Made by a program: the position numbers and the translations under genes | Assembly: GCF_006345805.1 (NCBI RefSeq) | Contig: NC_043014.1 | Location: forward strand, 50,840,001 to 50,904,000 | DNA length: 64,000 bases | Source of the DNA: Octopus sinensis | Lineage: Eukaryota | Direction: 5' to 3' | Shown: positions 3,345 to 61,322 of the stretch, in pieces | How the letters are laid out: each line of letters starts with the position of its first letter | Position numbering within the stretch: position 1 is the first letter of the stretch | The notes under the pieces: generated by a model | What the model was told of the DNA's origin: nothing | Databases searched by the model: none | The model's input: only the letters and a program-made list of their open reading frames with translations

Positions 3345-3703
3345 ATAAATATTAGGGAATAAATCCAAATTTACAGGGAAAAATCAGATTCAGGATTGAA
3401 TCCAATTTTATAGTAAAATATTCTATTATATTAAATTAGAGACAAAACCACTATTATGCAAATCAAACAAAGAAAGACTTAAGCCAATACATAAAATAAT
3501 TTATATAAATTAAAATTTAACAATTATAAATAACCACTACGATCGTTTCGTGTCAGCACATCTTTGAGACATTCTTCAGGTGGTTTCAAAACCTTCTTGG
3601 CGAGTTTTAAACTATGTAAATTTATATAAATTATTTTATGTATTGGCTTAAGTCTTTCTTTGTTTGATTTGCATAATAGTGGTTTTGTCTCTAATTTAAT
3701 ATA

Positions 3704-3706
<3 letters not shown>
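3345..3706. mobile_element. pLTR-like block with an 88-bp inverted duplication (3424-3511 / 3619-3706) around a hammerhead
   Basis: Arms read as exact reverse complements. Related fragments occur at 15053-15108 and 48905-48970. Confidence 0.7.
3532..3585 (-). ncRNA. Minimal type I hammerhead ribozyme (Penelope-like pLTR type)
   Basis: Minus strand reads AACCAC CTGAAGA ATGTC-13nt-GACAC GAAAC GATC GTA GTGGTT. Stem I is 6 bp, stem II is TGTC/GACA with an A.C mismatch at its base, and stem III is the palindrome ACGATCGT. Confidence 0.75.
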
Positions 3707-3786
<80 letters not shown>

Positions 3787-3802
3787 CATATATATATATA
3801 TG

Positions 3803-3974
3803 CATATCTATCCGTTAAATTGTATCTTTTCATAATTTCCTTCATTTCTAGGTTTATTTTTTTCAAATTTTTCTTTGTATTAATTTTATATTTGGAGTTG
3901 AGTTCCTTCTTAATTAGCTTGCTATAAAGAGTGTAATCTATTCGATACAGATTACCAGTTTTATCCGCAGGCAC
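3803..3974 (-). mobile_element. Penelope-like element ORF fragment (pre-RT region)
   Basis: PADKTGNLYRIDYTLYSKLIKKELNSKYK resembles the ADK(T/G)-N-Y motif I recall upstream of PLE reverse transcriptases. It is flanked by hammerhead-bearing blocks. Confidence 0.5.
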
Positions 3975-4061
3975 TAAGATTCCTTGTTTATTCCGAATTG
4001 AACAAATAAAGTTTCTGAGATGTTTGAGGTGACAACATCCCCTTTGGAAATCTCATATGTG

Positions 4062-4150
4062 TTTTGGCTGATAAATACAGGACATTTGTATTTGATGCAA
4101 TATTTGCAGCTTTTAATAAATCTGTTCTTCGTATGAAACAATTGTACTGA
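4062..4150 (+). ncRNA. Decayed paralogue of the 61031-61118 hammerhead
   Basis: TTTTGG CTGATAA ATAC...GTAT GAAAC AATT GTA CTGAA. The core G8 is lost. Flanks 4030-4290 align by eye with 60990-61260. Confidence 0.55.
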
Positions 4151-4302
4151 ACAACTAATCCAATATTGTTGCTTTTTTTCTTGTTTATAATCACCCCACA
4201 TTATTTTATGGTTAATACCATAAAGATTTCTGGTGCTTCTAAGTTAAGTACCACATTCATGTGAATTCATTGGAACTCACTTGAATCTTAATTGTTTTAC
4301 TG

Positions 4303-4347
<45 letters not shown>

Positions 4348-8944: not shown

Positions 8945-9185
8945 GCGGTGAGCTGGCAGAAACGTTAGCATTCCGGGCGAGATGCTCAGCGGTATTTCGT
9001 CTGTCTGAACGTTCTGAGTTCAAATTCCGCCGACGTCGACTTTGCTTGTCATCCTTTTGGGGTCGATTAAATAAGTACCAGTTACGGACTGGGTCGATGT
9101 AATCGACTTAATCCGTTTGTCTGTCCTTGTTTGTTCCCTCTGTGTTTAGCCCCCTGTGGGTAGTAAAGAAATAGGTATTTCGACT
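8945..9185 (+). mobile_element. SINE family C, head plus one ~181-bp unit
   Basis: GCGGTGAGCTGGCAGAAACGTTAG...GAGTTCAAATTCC (B box). Body follows the family pattern CTTTGCCTTTCATCCTTTCGGGGTCGAT-AAATAAGTACC, and the end repeats the head motif GGTATTTCG. Confidence 0.85.
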
Positions 9186-12530: not shown

Positions 12531-12561
<31 letters not shown>

Positions 12562-12899
12562 TGCATGTATGTATGTATGTATGTGTGTATGTATGTATGT
12601 AAGCATGTATGTATGTATGCATGCATGCATGTATGTATGTATGTATGTATGTATGTGTGTATGTATGTATGTAAGCATGTATGTATGTATGTATGTATGT
12701 ATGTGTGTATGTATGTATGTATGTATGTATGTATGTATGTATGTATATATGTATGTATGTATGTATGTAAGCATGTATGTATGTATGTATGTATGTATGT
12801 GTGTATGTATGTATGTATGTATGTATGTATGTATATATGTATGTATGTAAGTATGTATGTATGTATGTATGTATGTGTGTATGTATGTATGTATGTATG

Positions 12900-12930
<31 letters not shown>

Positions 12931-13421
12931 GCATGTATGTATGTATGTATGTATGTGTGTATGTATGTATGTATGTATATATGTATGTATGTAAGCATGT
13001 ATGTATGTATGTATGTATGTATGTGTGTATGTATGTATGTATGTATGTATGTATGTATGTATATATGTATGTATGTATGTAAGCATGTATGTAAGTATGT
13101 ATGTATGTATGTATGTATATATGTATGTATGTAAGCATGTATGTATGTATGTATGTATGTATGTGTGTATGTATGTATGTATGTATGTATGTATGTATGT
13201 ATGTATGTATGTAGTATGTATGTATGTAAATATGTATGTATGTAAGCATGTATGTATGTATGTATGTATGTATGTGTGTATGTATGTATGTAAGCATGTA
13301 TGTATGTATGTATGTATGTATGTATGTATGTATGTATGTATGTATGCATGCATGCATGCATGTATGTATGTATGTTGTATGTATGTATGTATGTATGTAT
13401 GTATGTATGTATGTATGTATA
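12530..13421. repeat. ~890-bp interrupted (TATG)n microsatellite with recurring TAAGCATG/TGTG/TATA variants
   Basis: Direct reading; explains the ORFs at 12412-13523. Confidence 0.97.
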
Positions 13422-14203
13422 GTCCATAATGTTTACCCAAATGTTGAAACAGTCAATGAAGAAAGTCCTTCTTCAGAGGTCACAGTTGAAAAATTTTCGA
13501 TGCTTCTTGCAAATTTTCAGTAGTTTTGACTGTTTAAAATGTTGCAAGACGCAACGAAAATTTTATTAAAATAAAAATAAGAAAAAAGTGGAAGTTTTAC
13601 CGGTGAGTGTGTTACATTATAAGGCACAAAAAGAAAATGACTCTCCCCAGACACAACACAATAAGCTTCAACACACGAACTCACATAAAGAATCTTGCAA
13701 ACCAAATCAAAAAATGAAATATATATATGGAAGGGCTTATGGAAGATTGGCTTGATTTAATTTAATCAGGTTAGTTTACCATTAAACAGCGGATGAAACG
13801 GTATACCGTACAAGAAATTACAGGGTAAATGTTTTTTTTAATTTTCTCCTGTTTACGGAATTAATCTTTATTTGCGGTAGAAGCTTTGGCTGTTGTTATT
13901 CTAGTGGGTGAATGGCTATTATGGCCGTCCTTAATTGTTAATGTTGAACTTAAAAATGGTCTATGACTATTTAATTTTTTCCTACTGGCCGCTGGTGGCA
14001 ATAAAATTCTACAAAATTTTCCTTGCCACCCTATATTGATTAATTATGAATTTTTTGGTTAATTCCGTAATGGAATCGACGGCTGATATTTAATTTGCTG
14101 CCGATAAATTTGGCGCGAGTGCGACGATTTGAAAATTTTAGGTCAGATATTGCCTTGGCAAGATTGGGTATGCCTCGTGTAATTATCTGTTCCGACTTGA
14201 GCT

Positions 14204-14310
14204 ATTTCTTGCTGAAGAATCCGAGGGCTTATGGAAGATTGGCTTGATTTAATTTAATCAGGTTAGTTTACCATTAAACAGCGGATGAAACGGTATACCG
14301 TACAAGAAAT
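14204..14310 (+). ncRNA. Type I hammerhead ribozyme, complete array copy 1
   Basis: Stem I ATTTCTTG/CAAGAAAT (8 bp); core CTGAAGA 14212-14218; stem II ATCCG/CGGAT closing a ~58-nt pairable insert; GAAAC 14287-14291; stem III within palindrome ACGGTATACCGT; cleavage triplet GTA 14300-14302. Confidence 0.85.
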
Positions 14311-14696
14311 TACAGGGTAAATGTTTTTTTTAATTTTCTCCTGTTTACGGAATAATCTTTATTTGCGGTAGAAGCTTGGCTGTTATTTCTAGTAGGTGAA
14401 TGGCCTATTATGGCCGTTCCTTAATTGTTAATGTTGAACTTAAAAATGGTCTATGACTATTTAATTTTTTCCTACTGGGCCGCTGGTGGCAATAAAATTC
14501 TACAAAATTTTCCTTGCCACCCTATATTGATTAATTATGAATTTTTTGGTTAATTCCGTAATGGAATCGACGGCTGATATTTATTTGCTGCCGATAAATT
14601 TGGCGCGAGTGCGACGATTTGAAAATTTTAGGTCAGATATTGCCTTGGCAGATTGGGTGGGATGCCTCGTGTAATTATCTGTTCCGACTTGAGCTA

Positions 14697-14799
14697 TTCT
14701 TGCTGAAGAATCCGAGGGCTTATGGAAGATTGGCTTGATTTAATTTAATCAGGTTAGTTTACCATTAAACAGCGGATGAAACGGTATACCGTACAAGAA
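14697..14799 (+). ncRNA. Type I hammerhead ribozyme, complete array copy 2
   Basis: Stem I TTCTTG/CAAGAA; CTGAAGA 14703-14709; ATCCG/CGGAT; GAAAC 14778-14782; GGTATACC; GTA 14791-14793. Confidence 0.83.
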
Positions 14800-15023
14800 A
14801 TTACAGGGTAAATGTTTTTTTTAATTTTCTCCTGTTTACGGAATTAATCTTTATTTGCGGTAGAAGCTTTGGCTGTTATTTCTAGTGGGTGAATGGCCTA
14901 TTATGGCCGTTCCTTAATTGTTAATGTTGAACTTAAAAATGGTCTATGACTATTTAATTTTTTCCTACCGGGCCGCTGGTGGCAATAAAATTCTACAAAA
15001 TTTTCCTTGCCACCCTATATTGA

Positions 15024-15059
<36 letters not shown>

Positions 15060-15302
15060 TTAGAGATAAAAATTTTCCCTGTAAGTTTGAATTTACTCCC
15101 TAATATTATATATATATATACACACACACATATATATATACATAACATAGTTGTGTATGTATGCTTAAATACATACACACACACGCTTTAGTTTTATATT
15201 TATGGACTACCATATTAGTATGGCGATAACCATTAATATCCAGTAACGCTGCCGTAATCTCCTTTAGAGAGACTTAGTAATTTTAATATTTCTATTATAT
15301 AT

Positions 15303-17131: not shown

Positions 17132-17633
17132 CTGTGTGAGTGTGCGCATGTGTGTGTGTATGTATGTATGTATCTGCACATGCGCCTGCACGCAAATATA
17201 TATACACACGCATATGTACACATTTATATTCAAGGAATATCAATTTTGTTAATCGAACATATCTTTTGATATTTTCAATTAATCAACTCTTAAGCGTTCC
17301 AGGAAACCAATGAAAGGATACCGACTCCGTCACTTCCCCCTTGTTTAATATCTACATACCTATATTGAAATGTAAATAACTGTGTGTACTTTTGTTTGTG
17401 TAATAAAGTAAAACTTCGAATCAGGGAAATGGAGTTCTATATTACTGCTCTCAAATTTTGGTGCGAGGCCAGAAATTTTGGGGAGTCGCCTAAGTCGATT
17501 ACATGAACCTCAGTGCTTAACAGGTGCAGATTTTATAAAAGACAGGGACAACCTCAGCGGAATTTGAACTTAGAATGTAAAGACCAACGAAATAATCATT
17601 AGCATTTTGCTCCACCTGCGAACAATTCGTATC

Positions 17634-18222
17634 TATTTATTGCCCACAAGGGGCTAAACATAGAGGAGACAAACAAGGACAGACAAACGGATTAAGTCGA
17701 TTACATCGACCCTAGTGCGTAAATGGTACTTATTTAATCGACCCCGAAAGAATGAAAAGCAAAGTCGACCTCGGTGGAATTTGAACTCAGAACGTAACGG
17801 CAGACGAAATTCCTATTTCTTTACTACCCACAAGGGGTTAACCACAGAGAGGACAAACAAGGACAGACAAACGGATTAAGTCGATTATTTCGACCCCAGT
17901 GCATACCTGGTACTTATTTAATCGACACCGAAAGAATGAAAAGCAAAGTCGACCTCGGCGGAATTTGAACTCAGAACGTAACGGCGACGAAATACCTATT
18001 TCTTTACTACCCACAAGGGGCTAAACACAGAGGGGACAAACAAGGAGAGACATAGGTATTAAGTCGATTACATCGACCGCAGTGCGTCACTGGTACTTAT
18101 TTAATCGTCCCCGAAAGGATGAAAGGCAAAGTCGACCTCGGCGGAATTTGAATTCAGAACGTAACGGCAGACGAAATACCGCAAAGCATTTCGCCCGGCA
18201 TGCTAACGTTTCTGTCAGCTTA
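17634..18222 (-). mobile_element. SINE family C, head plus three tandem ~181-bp units
   Basis: CCCACAAGGGG...AAACACAGAG motif recurs near 17644, 17828 and 18010; single head at about 18175-18222. Confidence 0.88.
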
Positions 18223-18567
18223 CAACCTTAGACATCTATATCATTGATACCTGTTTCGTCGCACTATTACTAATTATCTTTTCAATGAAGTTTTGCGTTC
18301 GATAAACTCATTAAGCCTTTGGAACGTATTAGATTGGGGTATCGCCCACGTTCCCGAAACATTTGTTTCTACAGGCTGAACAACATCCGGATTATTTATC
18401 GGCTTAAAATTCCATTCTAAGTAATTATTGAAGTTAATTATAACAGTGGTTGTAAATACATGTTCACAACACTGAAATTGACGCCATTATGCTTCTTTAA
18501 TTAACCACAGGCATTGCATTCAAAGACGAAACATTTGTCAATTATTTCGCCTTAGTTAAAGAGAAAT

Positions 18568-18823
18568 ATGTCAGGGCGTGGCAGACCCCAGTCCACTTGG
18601 CTGCCGTGATGGAGTACACGACTTCAAAAGTGTTGGAATTGGAAGGTAATGCTGCCAGAGACAACAAAAACTCTCGAATAAACCCCCGCCACTCGCAGTT
18701 GGTTATCCGCAAAGACCAGGAATTGAATACATTGGGTCTGGAGTTACCATTGCACAGTGAGGCGTCTTGCCCAACATCCAGTCCGTCCTTCTATTCCAGA
18801 AGACACAGAAGGCTGCCAAGTAA
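18568..18823 (+). pseudogene. H2A: Histone H2A pseudogene with internal deletion
   Basis: MSGRG, then [49 protein letters not shown], a frameshift, and [25 protein letters not shown]. About 40 codons are missing after the N-terminus, and there is no canonical 3' stem-loop. Confidence 0.92.
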
Positions 18824-19075
18824 AAAAAGGAAATGGAGAAAAAGAAACGAGTCGTGGCCCCAATCTTGCTGTTAAAGCATCAATGAATCCACTGGCCCTT
18901 CATGAAAGTTTTGTCATGGTCCCTATCGTCATTTTGCGATATACTTTTTTTTTCACTTATATTTCATGCCTCTTAAATTCGCAATATCTGTTTTATGGAA
19001 AGAGGAATAATATTTCAATATGAAACTAGTAATCTTCGTCCTGTTCTTTCATATATCATACAACGTTGAAACAGG

Positions 19076-19550
19076 TTGAAACAGCTAAGACTCTACTCCC
19101 TGGAGAGAAGACGGGAGAGGTATGCAGTAATATATGTCTGGAAGATCCTGGAAGGAATTGTGCCAAATTTTGGCATTGTAAGCTACACTAATGCTAGAAC
19201 GGGACGACACTGCATAGTGCCAAAGATCCCAGCAATGCCATCACGCTTCAGGACCAGCTTCGGCAACAGCCTGAGTTTCAAGGGCACACAGCTTTTTAAT
19301 ATTCTCCCAAAGAGTCTGAGGAACTTGCACACAGTAGATGTAGCGGTTTTTAAATCAAAGTTGGACATCTTCCTGTCAAGAGTCCCAGATGAACCTACCT
19401 CACGGCAAGAGGTGCAAATGAGAGTAGCTGTATCAAACTCCATTCTTCACCAAGTGCCACATATTAGACGAGGTTCGTCGTAATAACAGTGTAGCACAAA
19501 ACGGCGGTGCATCAGCATGGCCGCAGCTCTGAGCTGAAACTACAAAAAAA
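19076..19550 (+). mobile_element. 5'-truncated CR1-type LINE 3' end
   Basis: LRLYSLERRRERYAVIYVWKILEGIVPN...QLFNILPKSLRN...FKSKLDIFLSRVPDEP matches the CR1-clade ORF2 C-terminus. The 3' tail GGCGGTGCATCAGCATGGCCGCAGCTCTGAGCTGAAAC is followed by an A-run. Confidence 0.85.
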
Positions 19551-40859: not shown

Positions 40860-41530
40860 ATTGGATAGACAGAGAAAAAAGATTACTACAGATGACTAAA
40901 AGTGACTTAAAAGCAGAAACGGCAGCTGTAATCTGTGCTGCCCAAGAGCTAGCATTAAGAACGAATTACATCACATACAGAAAAGATAACACATCAGAAA
41001 GTGATAAGTGTTATTATTTTAACAATAGAAAAAAGATGGTATAGGCACGCACCAGAAAAGGTCACAGAAAATAAGAAAGCAACCATACACTGGGATATGC
41101 CGATACACACAGATAGAGAAATTAAGGCCAACAGACCAGATATAGTTGTCAGAGATCATGAAGGAAAAAAATGCTTTCTAATTGATGTGTCAATACCGGC
41201 AGATGACAACGTGTCTCTAAAAGAAATGAAGAAACTTTCAAAATACAAAGACCTGGAAATGGAGGTAACCAGAATGTGGAATCTAAAAACAGAAACAATT
41301 CCTATCATAATAGGTGCATTAGGCATGATAAAAAAATATTCAGACAAAGACATAACAAAAACACCAGGACTTACAAACACATATAACATACAGAAAATTG
41401 CACTACTAGGCACTGCACACATCCTACGCAGAACACTTTCCATACAATAACCATCAGAGCATCACAACAAATCACAGCACATACCCAAGGCACACAGAGC
41501 TGCGCTCGGTAGTGAAGTGAAAGCACGCTA
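40860..41530 (+). mobile_element. R4/Dong-type non-LTR retrotransposon 3' fragment (restriction-like endonuclease) inserted in (TAA)n
   Basis: LKAETAAVICAAQELALRTNYI..., then IHWDMPIHTDREIKANRPDIVV...LIDVSIP-DDNV--KE--KLSKYKDL...IPIIIGALG...IQKIALLGTAHILRRTL. (TAA)n lies on both sides. The zinc-knuckle segment appears deleted. Confidence 0.88.
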
Positions 41531-46535: not shown

Positions 46536-46559
46536 ATATATATATATATATATTTTTTT

Positions 46560-46740
46560 TTTTTTTCCTCTGTCTTCCCTTCTCTGGATCTTTCCTTCTC
46601 CTATGTTTCCGACGAAGAGCTCCGCTCGAAACGTTAATCCCTCCTTCTTTCCTTCTTTCCTGCGCGTCCAATAATATTATATTTGTTCCACGTCCTCGCG
46701 TTGTTGTGATTTTTTTGTGTTTTCTTGTTTGGATTAACTT

Positions 46741-48789: not shown

Positions 48790-48837
<48 letters not shown>

Positions 48838-48841
48838 AAGT

Positions 48842-48884
48842 CCACCTGAAGATTGTCGATCAAGACAAGAAACGATTGTAGTGG
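48842..48884 (+). ncRNA. Minimal type I hammerhead ribozyme, same family as 3532-3585
   Basis: CCAC CTGAAGA TTGTC GATCAA GACAA GAAAC GATT GTA GTGG. It is followed by a tail (TTTATGTATTG...TAGTGGTTTTGTCTCTAAT) closely similar to the one after the 3532-3585 hammerhead. Confidence 0.75.
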
Positions 48885-49014
48885 CGGTTTTTTTGACTAT
48901 TTATTAAAATTTTATGTATTGATTAAGTCTTTCCTTGTTTGTTTTGCAAAATAGTGGTTTTGTCTCTAATAATATTTTATATATATATATATATAATATA
49001 TATATATATATAAT

Positions 49015-49195
49015 TAATCCAAACAAGAAAACACAGAAAAAACACAGCAACGCGAGGACGTGGAACAATTAAAGTATTATTTGACGCTCAGGAAAGAAGG
49101 GAAGAAGGGTTTAACGTTTCGAGCGGAGCTCTTCGTCGGAAACAAGGAGGAGGAAAGATCCCAAAAAGGGAAGACAGAGGAAAAAAAAAATTTTG
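49015..49195 (-). mobile_element. Second copy of the CCGACGA hammerhead-like element (core 49109-49143)
   Basis: Reverse complement reads GTTT CCGACGA AGAGCTCCGCTC GAAAC GTT AAAC; flanks match 46560-46742. Confidence 0.6.
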
Positions 49196-53699: not shown

Positions 53700-54018
53700 G
53701 CGAAATTTGAACTCAGAACGTAAAGAGGGTTGAAATACCTATTTCTTTATTACCCACAAGGGGCTAAACACAGAGGGGACAAACAAGAACAGACATAGGT
53801 ATTAAGTCGATTACATCGACCCCAGTGCGTAACTGGTACTTAATTTATCGACCCCGAAAAGATGAAAGGCAAAGTCGACCTCGGCGGAATTTGAACTCAC
53901 AACGTAACGCAGTCGAAATACCGCTAAGCATTTCGCCCGGACTGCTAACGATTCTGCCAGCTCGAAATACCACTAAGCATTTTGTCCGGCACGCTAATAG
54001 TTCTACCTGATCGCCGCC
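53700..54018 (-). mobile_element. SINE family C with duplicated head
   Basis: One unit followed by two GAAATACC(G/A)CTAAGCATTT heads (about 53915 and 53964). Degenerate SINE-C copies also lie near 17455-17610, 20060-20400, 25605-25680, 29420-29540, 32575-32720, 32920-33060 and 53270-53460. Confidence 0.8.
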
Positions 54019-56633: not shown

Positions 56634-58000
56634 TCTGTCGCTACGTTCTGAGTTCAAATTCCGTCGAGGTCGACTTTGCCTTTCATCCTTTCGGGGTCGC
56701 TAAATTAAGTATCACTTACGCACTGGGGTCGATGTAATCGACTTAATCCATTTTCTGTCCTTATTTGTTCCCTCTGTGTTTGGCTCTTGTGGGTAGTAAA
56801 GAAATACGGATTTCGTCCCTCTTTATGTTCTGAGTTCAAATTCTGCCGAGGTCGACTTTGCCTTTCATCCTTTCGGGGTCGCTAAATTAGTATCACTTAC
56901 GCACTGGGGTCGATGTAATCGACTTAATCCATTTTCTGTCCTTATTTGTTCCCTCTGTGTTTGGCTCTTGTGGGTAGTAAAGAATACGGATTTCGTCCCT
57001 CTTTATGTTCTGAGTTCAAATTCTGCCGAGGTCGACTTTGCCTTCATCCTTTCGGGGTCGCTAAATTAAGTATCACTTACGCACTGGGGTCGATGTAATC
57101 GACTTAATCCATTTTCTGTCCTTATTTGTTCCTCTGTGTTTGGCTCTTGTGGTAGTAAAGAAATACGGATTTCGTCCCTCTTTATGTTCTGAGTTCAAAT
57201 TCTGCCGAGGTCGACTTTGCCTTTCATTCCTTTCGGGGTCGCTAAATTAAGTATCACTTACGCACTGGGGTCGATGTAATCGACTTAATCCATTTTCTGT
57301 CCTTATTTGTTCCCTCTGTGTTTGGCTCTTGTGGGTAGTAAAGAAATACGGATTTCGTCCTCTTTATGTTCTGAGTTCAAATTCTGCCGAGGTCGACTTT
57401 GCCTTTCATCCTTTCGGGGTCGCTAAATTAAGTATCACTTACGCACTGGGGTCGATGTAATTGACTTAATCCATTTTCTGTCCTTATTTGTTCCCTCTGT
57501 GTTTGGCTCTTGTGGGTAGTAAAGAAATACGGATTTCGTCCCTCTTTATGTTCTGAGTTCAAATTCTGCCGAGGTCGACTTTGCCTTTCATCCTTTCGGG
57601 GTCGCTAAATTAAGTATCACTTACGCACTGGGGTCGATGTAATCGACTTAATCCATTTTCTGTCCTTATTTGTTCCCTCTGTGTTTGGCTCTTGTGGGTA
57701 GTAAAGAAATACGGATTTCGTCCCTCTTTATGTTCTGAGTTCAAATTCTGCCGAGGTCGACTTTGCCTTTCATCCTTTCGGGGTCGCTAAATTAAGTATC
57801 ACTTACGCACTGGGGTCGATGTAATCGACTTAATCCGTTTGTCTGTCCTTGTTTGTCTCCTCTGTGTTTAGCCTCTTGTGGGTAGTAAAGAAATAGAAAT
57901 AGGTATTCGTTCCTCTTTATGCTCTGAGTTCAAATTTCGCCGCGGTCGACTTTAACATTCATCCTTTCGTGGTGCACAGGGGTCGCTGTAATCGACTTGA
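56580..58000 (+). repeat. SINE-C-derived tandem array, one head plus about 7.5 units of 179-189 bp
   Basis: GTTCTGAGTTCAAATT starts at 56645, 56827, 57007, 57186, 57368, 57550 and 57732, with a diverged copy at 57921. Inner units are nearly identical. Confidence 0.92.
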
Positions 58001-60703: not shown

Positions 60704-60749
<46 letters not shown>

Positions 60750-60774
60750 CAAAATGTGACCTCGTGTGTACCGT

Positions 60775-60955
60775 TGGCGATTTTTTTCCTCTGTTTTCCC
60801 TTCTCTGGATCTTTCCTTCTCCTTTGTTTCCGACGAAGAGCTCCGCTCGAAACGTTAAACCCTCCTTCTTTCCTGAGCGTCCAATAATACTATATTTGTT
60901 CCACGTCCTCGCGTTGTTGTGTTTTTTGGTGCTTTCTTGTTTGGATGAACTTTAA
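60775..60955 (+). mobile_element. Third copy of the CCGACGA hammerhead-like element (core 60826-60860)
   Basis: GTTT CCGACGA AGAGCTCCGCTC GAAAC GTT AAAC with matching flanks; directly abuts the block holding the 61031 hammerhead. Confidence 0.6.
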
Positions 60956-61030
60956 ATAACTTCAATGCAGTTAATCTTACACCCTCATTTGTATCTACCC
61001 CTTTTGATGTTTGGGAATTCTCTGATGTTT

Positions 61031-61118
61031 TTTCGGCTGACGAGTACGAGCCATCTGTATTTACTGCATTTTTTGTAGCTTATTAAAGATGTCCTCGTAC
61101 GAAACAATTGTACCGAGA
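61031..61118 (+). ncRNA. Type I hammerhead ribozyme with extended stem II
   Basis: TTTCGG CTGACGA GTACGAG...CTCGTAC GAAAC AATT GTA CCGAGA. Stem II is 7 bp and extended by CATCT/AGATG; stem III is the palindrome ACAATTGT. Confidence 0.8.
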
Positions 61119-61274
61119 TTTTAATCCATTCTTGTTGCTTTTTTCCTATTTGTAATCACCCCACTTGTCGTATGGTTAACACCATATAGATTTCCGGTGG
61201 CATCCTAGTTAAGGACCATATTCATGTGAATTCATTAGAATTCACTTGAATCTCAATTACTTAAACCGTGTATA

Positions 61275-61322
<48 letters not shown>

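What the first reader, a model, noticed from the sequence alone, without database searches (positions are those of the whole stretch)
13732..15030. Tandem array with one hammerhead ribozyme per ~491-bp unit: candidate large retrozyme producing circular RNA
Seen: each unit carries a type I hammerhead with an 8-bp stem I, a CTGAAGA core, GAAAC and a GTA site. Stem II is ATCCG/CGGAT extended into a rod (ATGG/CCAT, AGATTGGC/GTTAGTTT with wobbles, TTGATT/AATCAG). Stem III sits in a 12-nt palindrome, ACGGTATACCGT. GTA sites at 13810, 14302 and 14793 are 492 and 491 nt apart; the first ribozyme lacks its 5' half. Established: metazoan non-LTR retrozymes are head-to-tail repeats with type I hammerheads that self-cleave into monomers and accumulate as circular RNA; as I recall, described monomers are usually shorter than this. 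Inference: a read-through transcript would release a 491-nt monomer (14303-14793) that can circularise and be recopied by a Penelope-like RT. The unit has no ORF and matches no other repeat in the window.
Basis: partly seen in the sequence, partly recalled or inferred. Interest (0 to 1): 0.92.

Follow-up and report, generated by a model that had tools for sequence, protein, structure and literature searches.

The report
Hammerhead-ribozyme tandem repeat (animal retrozyme)
This is a short tandem repeat in an animal genome in which each 491-base unit encodes a self-cutting hammerhead RNA; it fits a known class of parasitic elements (non-LTR retrozymes) thought to spread through small circular RNAs, so it is a clear but fairly ordinary example.

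Summary
Window 13732-15030 is a 2.6-copy tandem array (period 491-492, 97% identity). Each complete unit carries a type I hammerhead with an intact catalytic core, cutting after 14302 and 14793. The first copy lacks its 5' half. The motif is far beyond chance: 0 of 200 shuffles gave comparable helices, the minimum-energy fold is the hammerhead junction (z -4.7), and Rfam RF00163 matches full-length at 21.4 bits, below its gathering score of 34 because of a 58-nt insert in helix II. The unit is non-coding, 36% GC and strongly self-paired. The array sits inside a (TA)n tract with no poly(A), and neither end lies at a cleavage site. This fits a metazoan non-LTR retrozyme (a non-autonomous relative of Penelope-like elements) copied from a multimeric or circular RNA. 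Two other hammerhead-bearing repeat families lie in the same window, also abutting (TA)n. Cleavage, circularisation, copy number and host taxon could not be tested. The size is not unprecedented: the pDo500 cricket satellite has 463-505 bp units. Verdict: new member of a known kind, modest interest.

The parts
13732..15030 (+). Tandem array of 2.6 units (partial unit, 492-nt unit, 491-nt unit, 237-nt partial unit); GC 35.8%, non-coding
   Evidence: TRF; unit alignment; blastn of the unit against the window; GC and ORFs
13732..13818 (+). Hammerhead a, 5'-truncated. It has helix II (minus its first 5 nt), GAAAC, helix III, the GUA site (ends 13810) and the helix I 3' strand. It lacks the CUGAAGA core and the helix I 5' strand, so it cannot cleave in cis.
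   Evidence: Alignment of the three copies; junction print-out
14204..14310 (+). Hammerhead b, complete type I: 8-bp helix I, core 14212-14218, helix II 14219-14286 with a long rod, GAAAC 14287-14291, palindromic helix III 14290-14301, cleavage after A14302
   Evidence: Rfam 14206-14308, 21.4 bits; minimum-energy fold, z -4.68
14697..14799 (+). Hammerhead c, complete type I: 6-bp helix I (1-nt deletion relative to b), core 14703-14709, cleavage after A14793
   Evidence: (Rfam 14697-14799, 21.4 bits)
14303..14793 (+). Predicted 491-nt monomer released by cleavage at both complete ribozymes. As a circle it folds to -137.2 kcal/mol, 65% paired, z -4.75; the minus strand gives only -89.7, z -2.1.
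13719..13728 (.). Left-flank (TA)5 run, 3 bp from the array's 5' end
15029..15055 (.). Right-flank (TA)13 run directly continuing the array's 3' end (TTGATTAATTA|TATATA...); no poly(A)

Best explanation
The array is one insertion of a non-autonomous, hammerhead-bearing retroelement of the metazoan non-LTR retrozyme type, which are relatives of the pseudo-LTRs of Penelope-like elements (PLEs).

Proposed cycle, with the basis of each step:
1. A + strand read-through transcript folds a type I hammerhead in each complete unit. It can fold as a single motif (helix III of 4 bp plus a UAUA loop), or as a double hammerhead in which the two 12-nt palindromes pair with each other. This is predicted here by folding.
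2. Each ribozyme cuts after A17 of GUA, at 14302 and 14793. [quoted passage not shown] This is established hammerhead chemistry, inferred for this locus.
3. A host RtcB-type tRNA ligase closes the RNA into a highly self-paired circle. This comes from the literature and is not tested here.
4. A reverse transcriptase supplied in trans, most likely from a PLE, copies a circular or multimeric template. Priming is from a nick in a (TA)n tract at an AU-rich internal site (UUAAUUA). More than two rounds of copying give a head-to-tail cDNA that is 5'-truncated inside the ribozyme. This is inferred from the junctions.

This particular locus may or may not be transcribed.
For: - Ribozyme: complete core and three helices in two consecutive units. 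Chance is excluded. The minimum-energy fold is the hammerhead junction. Rfam RF00163 matches full-length.
- Strand-specific structure: 29 of 159 pairs in the monomer fold are G.U, and the + strand is 47 kcal/mol more stable than the minus strand. The helix II rod has 5 G.U in 14 pairs.
- Double hammerhead: in the read-through transcript, the minimum-energy fold pairs the two helix III palindromes with each other.
- Family traits met: non-coding, 35.8% GC, no terminal repeats, self-paired monomer. These match PMC7229834.
- Junctions: the array has 2.6 units, and its two ends lie inside helix II and at unit position 237. Neither end is a cleavage site, so a linear cleaved monomer cannot have been the direct template.
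- Target: (TA)n lies on both sides and there is no poly(A). PLEs insert as 5'-truncated partial tandems with a (TA)n bias (PMC8557442).
- Genomic context: two other hammerhead repeat families lie in the same 64 kb with ends within 1-6 bp of (TA)n runs, whereas only 5.4% of window positions lie within 5 bp of one.
- Published model: a target-primed circRNA copied into tandem cDNA (PMC7229834). Retrozymes are reported as PLE pseudo-LTR derivatives (bioRxiv 10.64898/2026.07.22.740005).
Against: - No expression, cleavage or circularity data are available.
- Only one locus is visible. Copy number and covariation could not be tested because no animal genome collection was available.
- The ribozyme domain is not significantly better conserved than the rest of the unit: 1 of 12 differences against 2.6 expected, P 0.23.
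- The Rfam score is below the gathering threshold (21.4 against 34).
- The 10.1-11.1 pair is A-U rather than the usual G-C, and canonical loop 1/loop 2 contacts cannot be recognised, so activity may be low.
- No PLE reverse transcriptase or GIY-YIG coding remnant was found in the window.
- (TA)n tracts here also hold a poly(A)-tailed SINE-like repeat, so the (TA)n target does not single out a PLE enzyme.
- A ribozyme-free 182-bp repeat also forms tandem arrays in this window, so tandem organisation alone does not prove rolling-circle reverse transcription.
Confidence: 0.72

Rival explanations
1. It is a small satellite or segmental tandem duplication made at the DNA level (replication slippage or unequal crossing-over) from a single hammerhead-bearing repeat. 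The tandem arrangement and the end points would then reflect DNA events, not reverse transcription of a circular RNA. The ribozyme could still process transcripts, as in the newt and cave-cricket satellites.
For: A ribozyme-free 182-bp repeat occurs in the same window both as solo copies and as tandem arrays of 3 and 7.3 units without (TA)n flanks. The array lies among dense microsatellites, including (TATG)222 about 300 bp upstream, a setting prone to slippage. Hammerhead satellites of 463-505 bp are known (PMC2837043).
Against: Both ends lie in one (TA)n tract, with a 5'-truncated first unit and an AU-rich 3' junction. That is the pattern expected of a PLE-type target-primed insertion (PMC8557442). 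The literature now treats such satellites and retrozymes as one class (PMC7229834), so this rival is not fully exclusive of the main explanation.
Confidence: 0.15
2. It is the remnant of an autonomous Penelope-like element: tandem pseudo-LTRs left after loss of the reverse transcriptase / GIY-YIG ORF.
For: PLE pseudo-LTRs carry type I hammerheads, and PLE insertions form partial tandems at (TA)n (PMC8557442, PMC4209133).
Against: The repeat period is a uniform 491-492 nt with no trace of an internal ORF. No reverse transcriptase or GIY-YIG similarity was found anywhere in the window. The hammerhead has a stable 4-bp helix III and long helices, unlike the minimal PLE variants (PMC4209133).
Confidence: 0.08
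3. It is an assembly artefact (an artificial duplication of one unit) or a chance hammerhead-like motif with no activity.
For: Most differences between units are 1-nt indels in short homopolymer runs, which could be sequencing errors. The Rfam score is below threshold.
Against: The units also differ by substitutions, in a mosaic pattern. The motif is far beyond chance, its fold is the minimum-energy structure, and two unrelated hammerhead families lie in the same window.
Confidence: 0.05

Closest known systems
Metazoan non-LTR retrozymes (Cervera & de la Pena 2020, PMC7229834): coral, mussel and axolotl families
   Same: Head-to-tail repeats with one type I hammerhead per unit. Non-coding, low GC, no LTR/PBS/PPT, and a highly self-paired monomer. 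The proposed cycle is the same: self-cleavage, tRNA-ligase circularisation, then reverse transcription in trans. They co-occur with PLE-type hammerhead elements.
   Different: The monomer is 491 nt, against reported repeats of 150-450 bp (circRNAs about 170-400 nt). Helix II carries a 58-nt internal loop plus a G.U-rich rod in place of a short loop 2. The 10.1-11.1 pair is A-U. Helix III is a stable 4-bp stem inside a 12-nt palindrome. Expression and circularity are untested here.
pDo500 satellite of Dolichopoda cave crickets (PMC2837043)
   Same: Tandem units of 463-505 bp with a hammerhead that processes multimeric transcripts into monomers. Both single and double hammerhead conformations have been proposed.
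   Different: pDo500 is a long satellite array conserved across species, and its ribozyme is a compact 49-68 nt. Here the array has 2.6 units inside a (TA)n tract and the ribozyme is 107 nt. No sequence relationship was tested.
Newt/salamander satellite 2 and axolotl retrozyme hammerheads
   Same: Type I hammerhead in tandem repeats of about 330-350 bp. A palindromic helix III region allows dimeric (double hammerhead) cleavage of oligomeric transcripts.
   Different: The amphibian helix III is 1-2 bp and depends on dimerisation. Here helix III can also form a stable 4-bp hairpin on its own.
Penelope-like elements and their minimal hammerheads (PMC4209133, PMC8557442)
   Same: Type I hammerheads, insertion as 5'-truncated partial tandems, and a (TA)n target bias. 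They are the likely source of the reverse transcriptase.
   Different: PLEs encode reverse transcriptase plus GIY-YIG, and their hammerheads are minimal (helix III of 0-2 bp). This unit has no ORF and a full-sized ribozyme.
Plant LTR retrozymes (PMC4918200)
   Same: Non-autonomous retroelements that spread through hammerhead-processed circRNAs.
   Different: Plant retrozymes have type III hammerheads inside LTRs, PBS and PPT motifs, 4-bp target-site duplications, 600-1000 nt monomers and high GC. None of these apply here.

Membership tests
Hammerhead ribozyme, type I | Conserved catalytic core: C3 U4 G5 A6 N7 G8 A9, G12 A13 A14, A15.1-U16.1, and H17 at the cleavage site | tested here: met
   CUGAAGA ... 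GAAA ... GUA|C is present in copies b and c; position 17 is A
Hammerhead ribozyme, type I | Three helices around the core, with helix I open and helices II and III closed | tested here: met
   Helix I is 8 bp (6 bp in copy c), helix II is 5 bp plus the rod, and helix III is 4 bp plus a UAUA loop. The minimum-energy fold is this junction, z -4.68.
Hammerhead ribozyme, type I | Rfam RF00163 gathering score of 34 bits (a curated operational threshold, not a structural definition) | tested here: not met
   21.4 bits, E 0.039, full model 1-45. The score is lowered by inserts of 57 nt in loop 2 and 6 nt in loop 3.
Hammerhead ribozyme, type I | Loop 1 / loop 2 tertiary contacts and actual self-cleavage | not testable with these tools
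   An internal loop follows 5 bp of helix II and unpaired bases follow helix I, but canonical contact nucleotides cannot be assigned by sequence. An in vitro assay is needed.
Metazoan non-LTR retrozyme | Tandem repeat with a type I hammerhead in each unit, and at least two consecutive complete motifs | tested here: met
   criterion from bioRxiv 10.64898/2026.07.22.740005
Metazoan non-LTR retrozyme | Short non-coding monomer of a few hundred nt with low GC (<45-50%) | tested here: met
   491 nt, GC 35.8%, longest ATG ORF 45 aa. The size is 41 bp above the descriptive 150-450 bp range of PMC7229834 but within that of pDo500.
Metazoan non-LTR retrozyme | No LTRs, PBS or PPT; not embedded in a larger coding element | tested here: met
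   The flanks are unique apart from microsatellites and a 65-bp fragment. No reverse-transcriptase-like ORF lies nearby.
Metazoan non-LTR retrozyme | Highly self-paired monomer RNA | tested here: met
   As a circle, 62-65% of bases are paired, z -3.9 and -4.75. The non-ribozyme part alone gives z -3.3. Control segments range from -1.9 to +1.1.
Metazoan non-LTR retrozyme | Accumulates as linear and circular RNA in tissues | not testable with these tools
   No transcriptome data are available
Metazoan non-LTR retrozyme | Multi-copy, dispersed family in the host genome | not testable with these tools
   There is one locus in the window. Nothing was found in metagenome, viral or prokaryote collections, or through spurious-ORF protein searches.
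Metazoan non-LTR retrozyme | Co-existence with autonomous Penelope-like elements | tested here: inconclusive
   PLE-style hammerhead repeats are present at 61031-61118 and 48842-48884. No PLE reverse transcriptase or GIY-YIG ORF lies in these 64 kb.
Penelope-like element (autonomous) | ORF encoding a reverse transcriptase, with or without a GIY-YIG endonuclease, between pseudo-LTRs | tested here: not met
Plant LTR retrozyme | Type III hammerheads in LTRs, PBS/PPT motifs, 4-bp target-site duplication | tested here: not met
   The hammerhead is type I, there are no LTRs, and the flanks are (TA)n
Viroid-like / deltavirus-like circular RNA agent | Ribozymes in both polarities and/or an ORF; an exogenous RNA genome | tested here: not met
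   There is a hammerhead on the + strand only, and no other ribozyme family at E <= 10 on either strand. There is no ORF. The sequence is genomic DNA in tandem.

The most novel reading that the evidence does not exclude
Its ribozyme replaces loop 2 with a 58-nt G.U-rich rod and can switch between single and double hammerhead through a 12-nt palindromic helix III. Its junctions would be a direct genomic footprint of target-primed, rolling-circle reverse transcription of a circRNA at a (TA)n nick: 2.6 units, neither end at a cleavage site, an AU-rich 3' microhomology with the (TA)n tract, and a 5' stop at the base of helix II.
Probability: 0.2. Interest if true: 0.55.

Novelty: new member of a known kind. 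Interest (0 to 1): 0.33.

Why it matters
Animal retrozymes are a recently recognised source of abundant ribozyme-made circular RNAs, and how they are mobilised is still inferred rather than shown. This locus is anatomically clean, with two intact ribozymes, a truncated third, and both junctions readable inside a (TA)n tract. It is a convenient test case for cleavage and circularisation assays. It also bears on whether the template for integration is a circle or a multimer, and whether Penelope-like enzymes do the copying. The same 64 kb holds two other hammerhead repeat families next to (TA)n tracts, which suggests the host genome is a good system for studying the relationship between retrozymes and Penelope-like elements. 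It does not change what is known about the class.

Tried and rejected
- Rfam at gathering thresholds over the whole window gave no hit. Only the permissive search on the region recovers Hammerhead_1.
- I searched for other copies of the ribozyme or unit with a gapped pattern and a 24-mer in metagenome contigs, viral contigs and prokaryote genomes. All returned nothing, and no animal genome collection was available.
- An indirect route through spurious ORFs also failed: exact look-ups of three in-unit ORFs and a full protein search with the 58-residue stop-free stretch.
- Host taxon: the LINE-type reverse transcriptase C-terminal ORF at 40959-41447 hits many marine invertebrates at 50-63% identity, and unnamed Logan/ENA contigs at 80-82%. 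The sample accessions appear in no paper. 'Octopus' therefore remains unverified.
- PLE coding remnants: 164 stop-to-stop ORFs were inspected and ten were scanned against Pfam, with no reverse transcriptase or GIY-YIG match. A 'PADKTGN' stretch at 3699-4052 (-) that recalled the PLE DKG motif got no support and was dropped.
- Conservation of the ribozyme domain against the rest of the unit was not significant (P 0.23).
- No tRNA-like part was found.
- An apparent long alignment between the 60.5-61.3 kb and 3.6-4.3 kb loci (66% identity) is driven by microsatellite sequence and was not used.

Full report
OBSERVATION

Tandem Repeats Finder reports one array at 13732-15031 with period 491, 2.6 copies and 97% matches. 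Reading the sequence and cutting it at the GTA sites gives four pieces: a 79-nt partial unit, a 492-nt unit, a 491-nt unit and a 237-nt partial unit. The GTA sites end at 13810, 14302 and 14793.

Each complete unit carries a type I hammerhead. In copy b the parts are:
- helix I: ATTTCTTG (14204-14211) pairs with CAAGAAAT (14303-14310);
- core: CTGAAGA (14212-14218);
- helix II: ATCCG pairs with CGGAT, enclosing 58 nt;
- GAAAC;
- helix III, inside the 12-nt palindrome ACGGTATACCGT (14290-14301);
- cleavage after A14302.

Copy c is identical from the core to the cleavage site. It has a 1-nt deletion in the 5' strand of helix I, which leaves 6 contiguous pairs. Copy a begins inside helix II and lacks the core. 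The only correction is that helix I is 8 bp in one copy and 6 bp in the other.

IS IT MORE THAN CHANCE?

A deliberately permissive descriptor was used: CTGANGA, helix II of at least 3 bp, GAAA, helix III of at least 2 bp, TH, and helix I of at least 4 bp. It finds 4 hits in the window against 0.105 per dinucleotide shuffle. None of 200 shuffles produced helices as strong as these.

The minimum-energy fold of 14200-14315 is exactly the hammerhead three-way junction (-36.3 kcal/mol, z -4.68).

Rfam finds nothing at gathering thresholds. On the region alone, RF00163 Hammerhead_1 aligns over its full length to both complete copies (21.4 bits, E 0.039, gathering score 34). The score is depressed by the 57-nt insert in loop 2. 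No other ribozyme family matches either strand at E <= 10.

ANATOMY OF THE UNIT

- The unit is 35.8% GC (window 34.7%). Its longest ATG ORF is 45 aa and its longest stop-free stretch is 60 aa. It has no tRNA-like part.
- Folded as circles, the two full units reach -132 and -137 kcal/mol with 62-65% of bases paired (z -3.9 and -4.75).
- The minus strand reaches only about -90 kcal/mol (z -2.1). The + strand fold has 29 G.U among 159 pairs, and the helix II rod has 5 G.U in 14 contiguous pairs. This points to the + strand RNA as the relevant molecule.
- The non-ribozyme part alone is also more structured than shuffles (z -3.3). Ordinary control segments range from -1.9 to +1.1.
- In a transcript spanning both complete ribozymes, the minimum-energy fold pairs the two 12-nt palindromes with each other. 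This is the double hammerhead geometry known from newt and PLE ribozymes.
- In the circular monomer, forcing helix I to form costs 3.2-4.8 kcal/mol. That would favour a circle that does not re-cleave. This is a prediction only.

JUNCTIONS AND CONTEXT

- The left end reads ...aaatatatatatgga|AGGGC and the right end reads ...TTGATTAATTA|tatatata(TA)13. There is no poly(A).
- Perfect (TA)>=5 runs cover 4.1% of the window, and 5.4% of positions lie within 5 bp of one. Both array ends do.
- The array holds more than two units, and neither end coincides with a cleavage site. A linear cleaved monomer therefore cannot have been the direct template. The template was multimeric or circular, or the array was remodelled later.
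- The flanks are not part of a larger repeat. The exception is a 65-bp piece at 15056-15120, related to sequence beside another hammerhead element at 3.3 kb.

The window holds two further hammerhead families:
- Element C (61010-61300, +) has an intact type I hammerhead at 61031-61118: helix I 6 bp, helix II 7 bp, and a 2-bp helix III with a palindromic AAUU loop. Rfam gives 18.9 bits, E 0.035. Its 3' end lies 6 bp from a (TA)n run. A 79%-identical copy at 4043-4331 has a decayed core (CTGATAA) and ends 1 bp from a (TA)n run.
- Element B has a minimal hammerhead-like motif at 48842-48884, directly after a (TA)n run. Relatives at 3405-3741 form an inverted pair. Rfam does not match it, so it is the weaker candidate.

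No PLE reverse transcriptase or GIY-YIG ORF was found.

Two observations temper the mechanistic reading. A poly(A)-tailed SINE-like repeat also sits inside (TA)n tracts. A ribozyme-free 182-bp repeat occurs both solo and as tandem arrays.

COMPARISON WITH WHAT IS KNOWN

- Cervera & de la Pena (PMC7229834) define metazoan non-LTR retrozymes as low-GC tandem repeats of 150-450 bp with type I hammerheads. They lack LTR, PBS and PPT, and are expressed as self-paired circRNAs of about 170-400 nt. The RNA is circularised by a tRNA ligase and presumed to be copied by PLE or LINE enzymes from a primed circRNA into tandem cDNA.
- Li et al. (bioRxiv 10.64898/2026.07.22.740005) call an array 'active' when at least two consecutive units have complete hammerheads. 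They derive retrozymes from PLE pseudo-LTRs.
- Craig et al. (PMC8557442) document the (TA)n target bias of PLEs, their partial-tandem 5'-truncated insertions, and hammerheads in pseudo-LTRs.
- The pDo500 satellite of Dolichopoda has 463-505 bp units with a hammerhead that processes multimers to monomers in vivo (PMC2837043). A 491-nt unit is therefore not unprecedented.
- Full-text searches found no description of cephalopod retrozymes or hammerheads. The host of this window could not be established either.

VERDICT

Shown here: - the array;
- the ribozyme anatomy and its statistical significance;
- the strand-specific fold;
- the non-coding, low-GC nature of the unit;
- the (TA)n junctions.

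Inferred from the family: cleavage, circularisation and mobilisation in trans.

Not testable here: copy number, covariation, expression and host.

The distinctive points are the long G.U-rich rod in helix II, the A-U 10.1-11.1 pair, the palindromic but stable helix III, and a unit slightly above the usual size range. These are variations within a known class. Novelty: new member of a known kind. Interest: about 0.33.

Noticed in passing
window 61010-61300 (+), hammerhead 61031-61118; second copy 4043-4331 (+): A second, unrelated repeat family with an intact type I hammerhead: TTTCGG|CTGACGA|GTACGAG...CTCGTAC|GAAAC|AATT|GTA|CCGAGA. Rfam RF00163 gives 18.9 bits, E 0.035. The 79%-identical copy at 4 kb has a decayed core (CTGATAA). 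Both copies end 1-6 bp from a (TA)n run, about 190 bp downstream of the ribozyme.
   Followed up: partly
window 48836-48985 (+), motif 48842-48884; relatives 3405-3641 (-) and 3620-3741 (+): A ~150-bp repeat flanked by (TA)n, with a minimal hammerhead-like motif: CCAC|CTGAAGA|TTGTC-GATCAA-GACAA|GAAAC|GATT|GTA|GTGG. The minus-strand copy near 3530-3590 has a 6-bp helix I and a palindromic GAUC loop. The two copies at 3.4-3.75 kb form a head-to-head inverted pair, as described for PLE min-hammerheads. Rfam does not match it.
   Followed up: partly
window 49015-49190 (+), 46557-46740 (-), 60715-60958 (-): A ~180-bp SINE-like repeat with an A-rich tail, each copy sitting between (TA)n runs. (TA)n tracts in this genome therefore collect several kinds of retroelement, not only hammerhead elements.
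   Followed up: partly
window 56645-57973 (+) and 17624-18177 (-); solo copies at 9011-9182 and 53721-53903: A 182-184-bp repeat occurs both as solo copies and as tandem arrays (7.3 and 3 units, 94-99% identical within the large array). It has no ribozyme match and no (TA)n flanks.
   Followed up: partly
window 15056-15120: A 65-bp piece between two (TA)n runs just right of the array. About 20 nt resemble the reverse complement of element B's 3' end. The next ~37 nt are an inverted copy of 3345-3382, which lies beside the minus-strand B copy. It may be a second small insertion, or a PLE-type 'tail', in the same microsatellite.
   Followed up: partly
window 18501-18872 (+): A stop-free stretch with a histone H2A-like C-terminal segment (Pfam PF00125, E 4.3e-5, just below the cut-off). 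It is probably a decayed histone pseudogene fragment next to a LINE-like ORF at 19070-19480.
   Followed up: no
window 40959-41447 (+): C-terminal part of a non-LTR (LINE-type) reverse transcriptase (zf-RVT-associated). It is 50-63% identical to proteins of cnidarians, a sea cucumber and a weevil, and 80-82% identical to unnamed assembly contigs.
   Followed up: yes
window 12532-13420: A very long (TATG)n microsatellite of about 223 units at 90% purity, lying 300 bp upstream of the array. The window as a whole is unusually rich in di-, tri- and tetranucleotide repeats (121 TRF rows).
   Followed up: no
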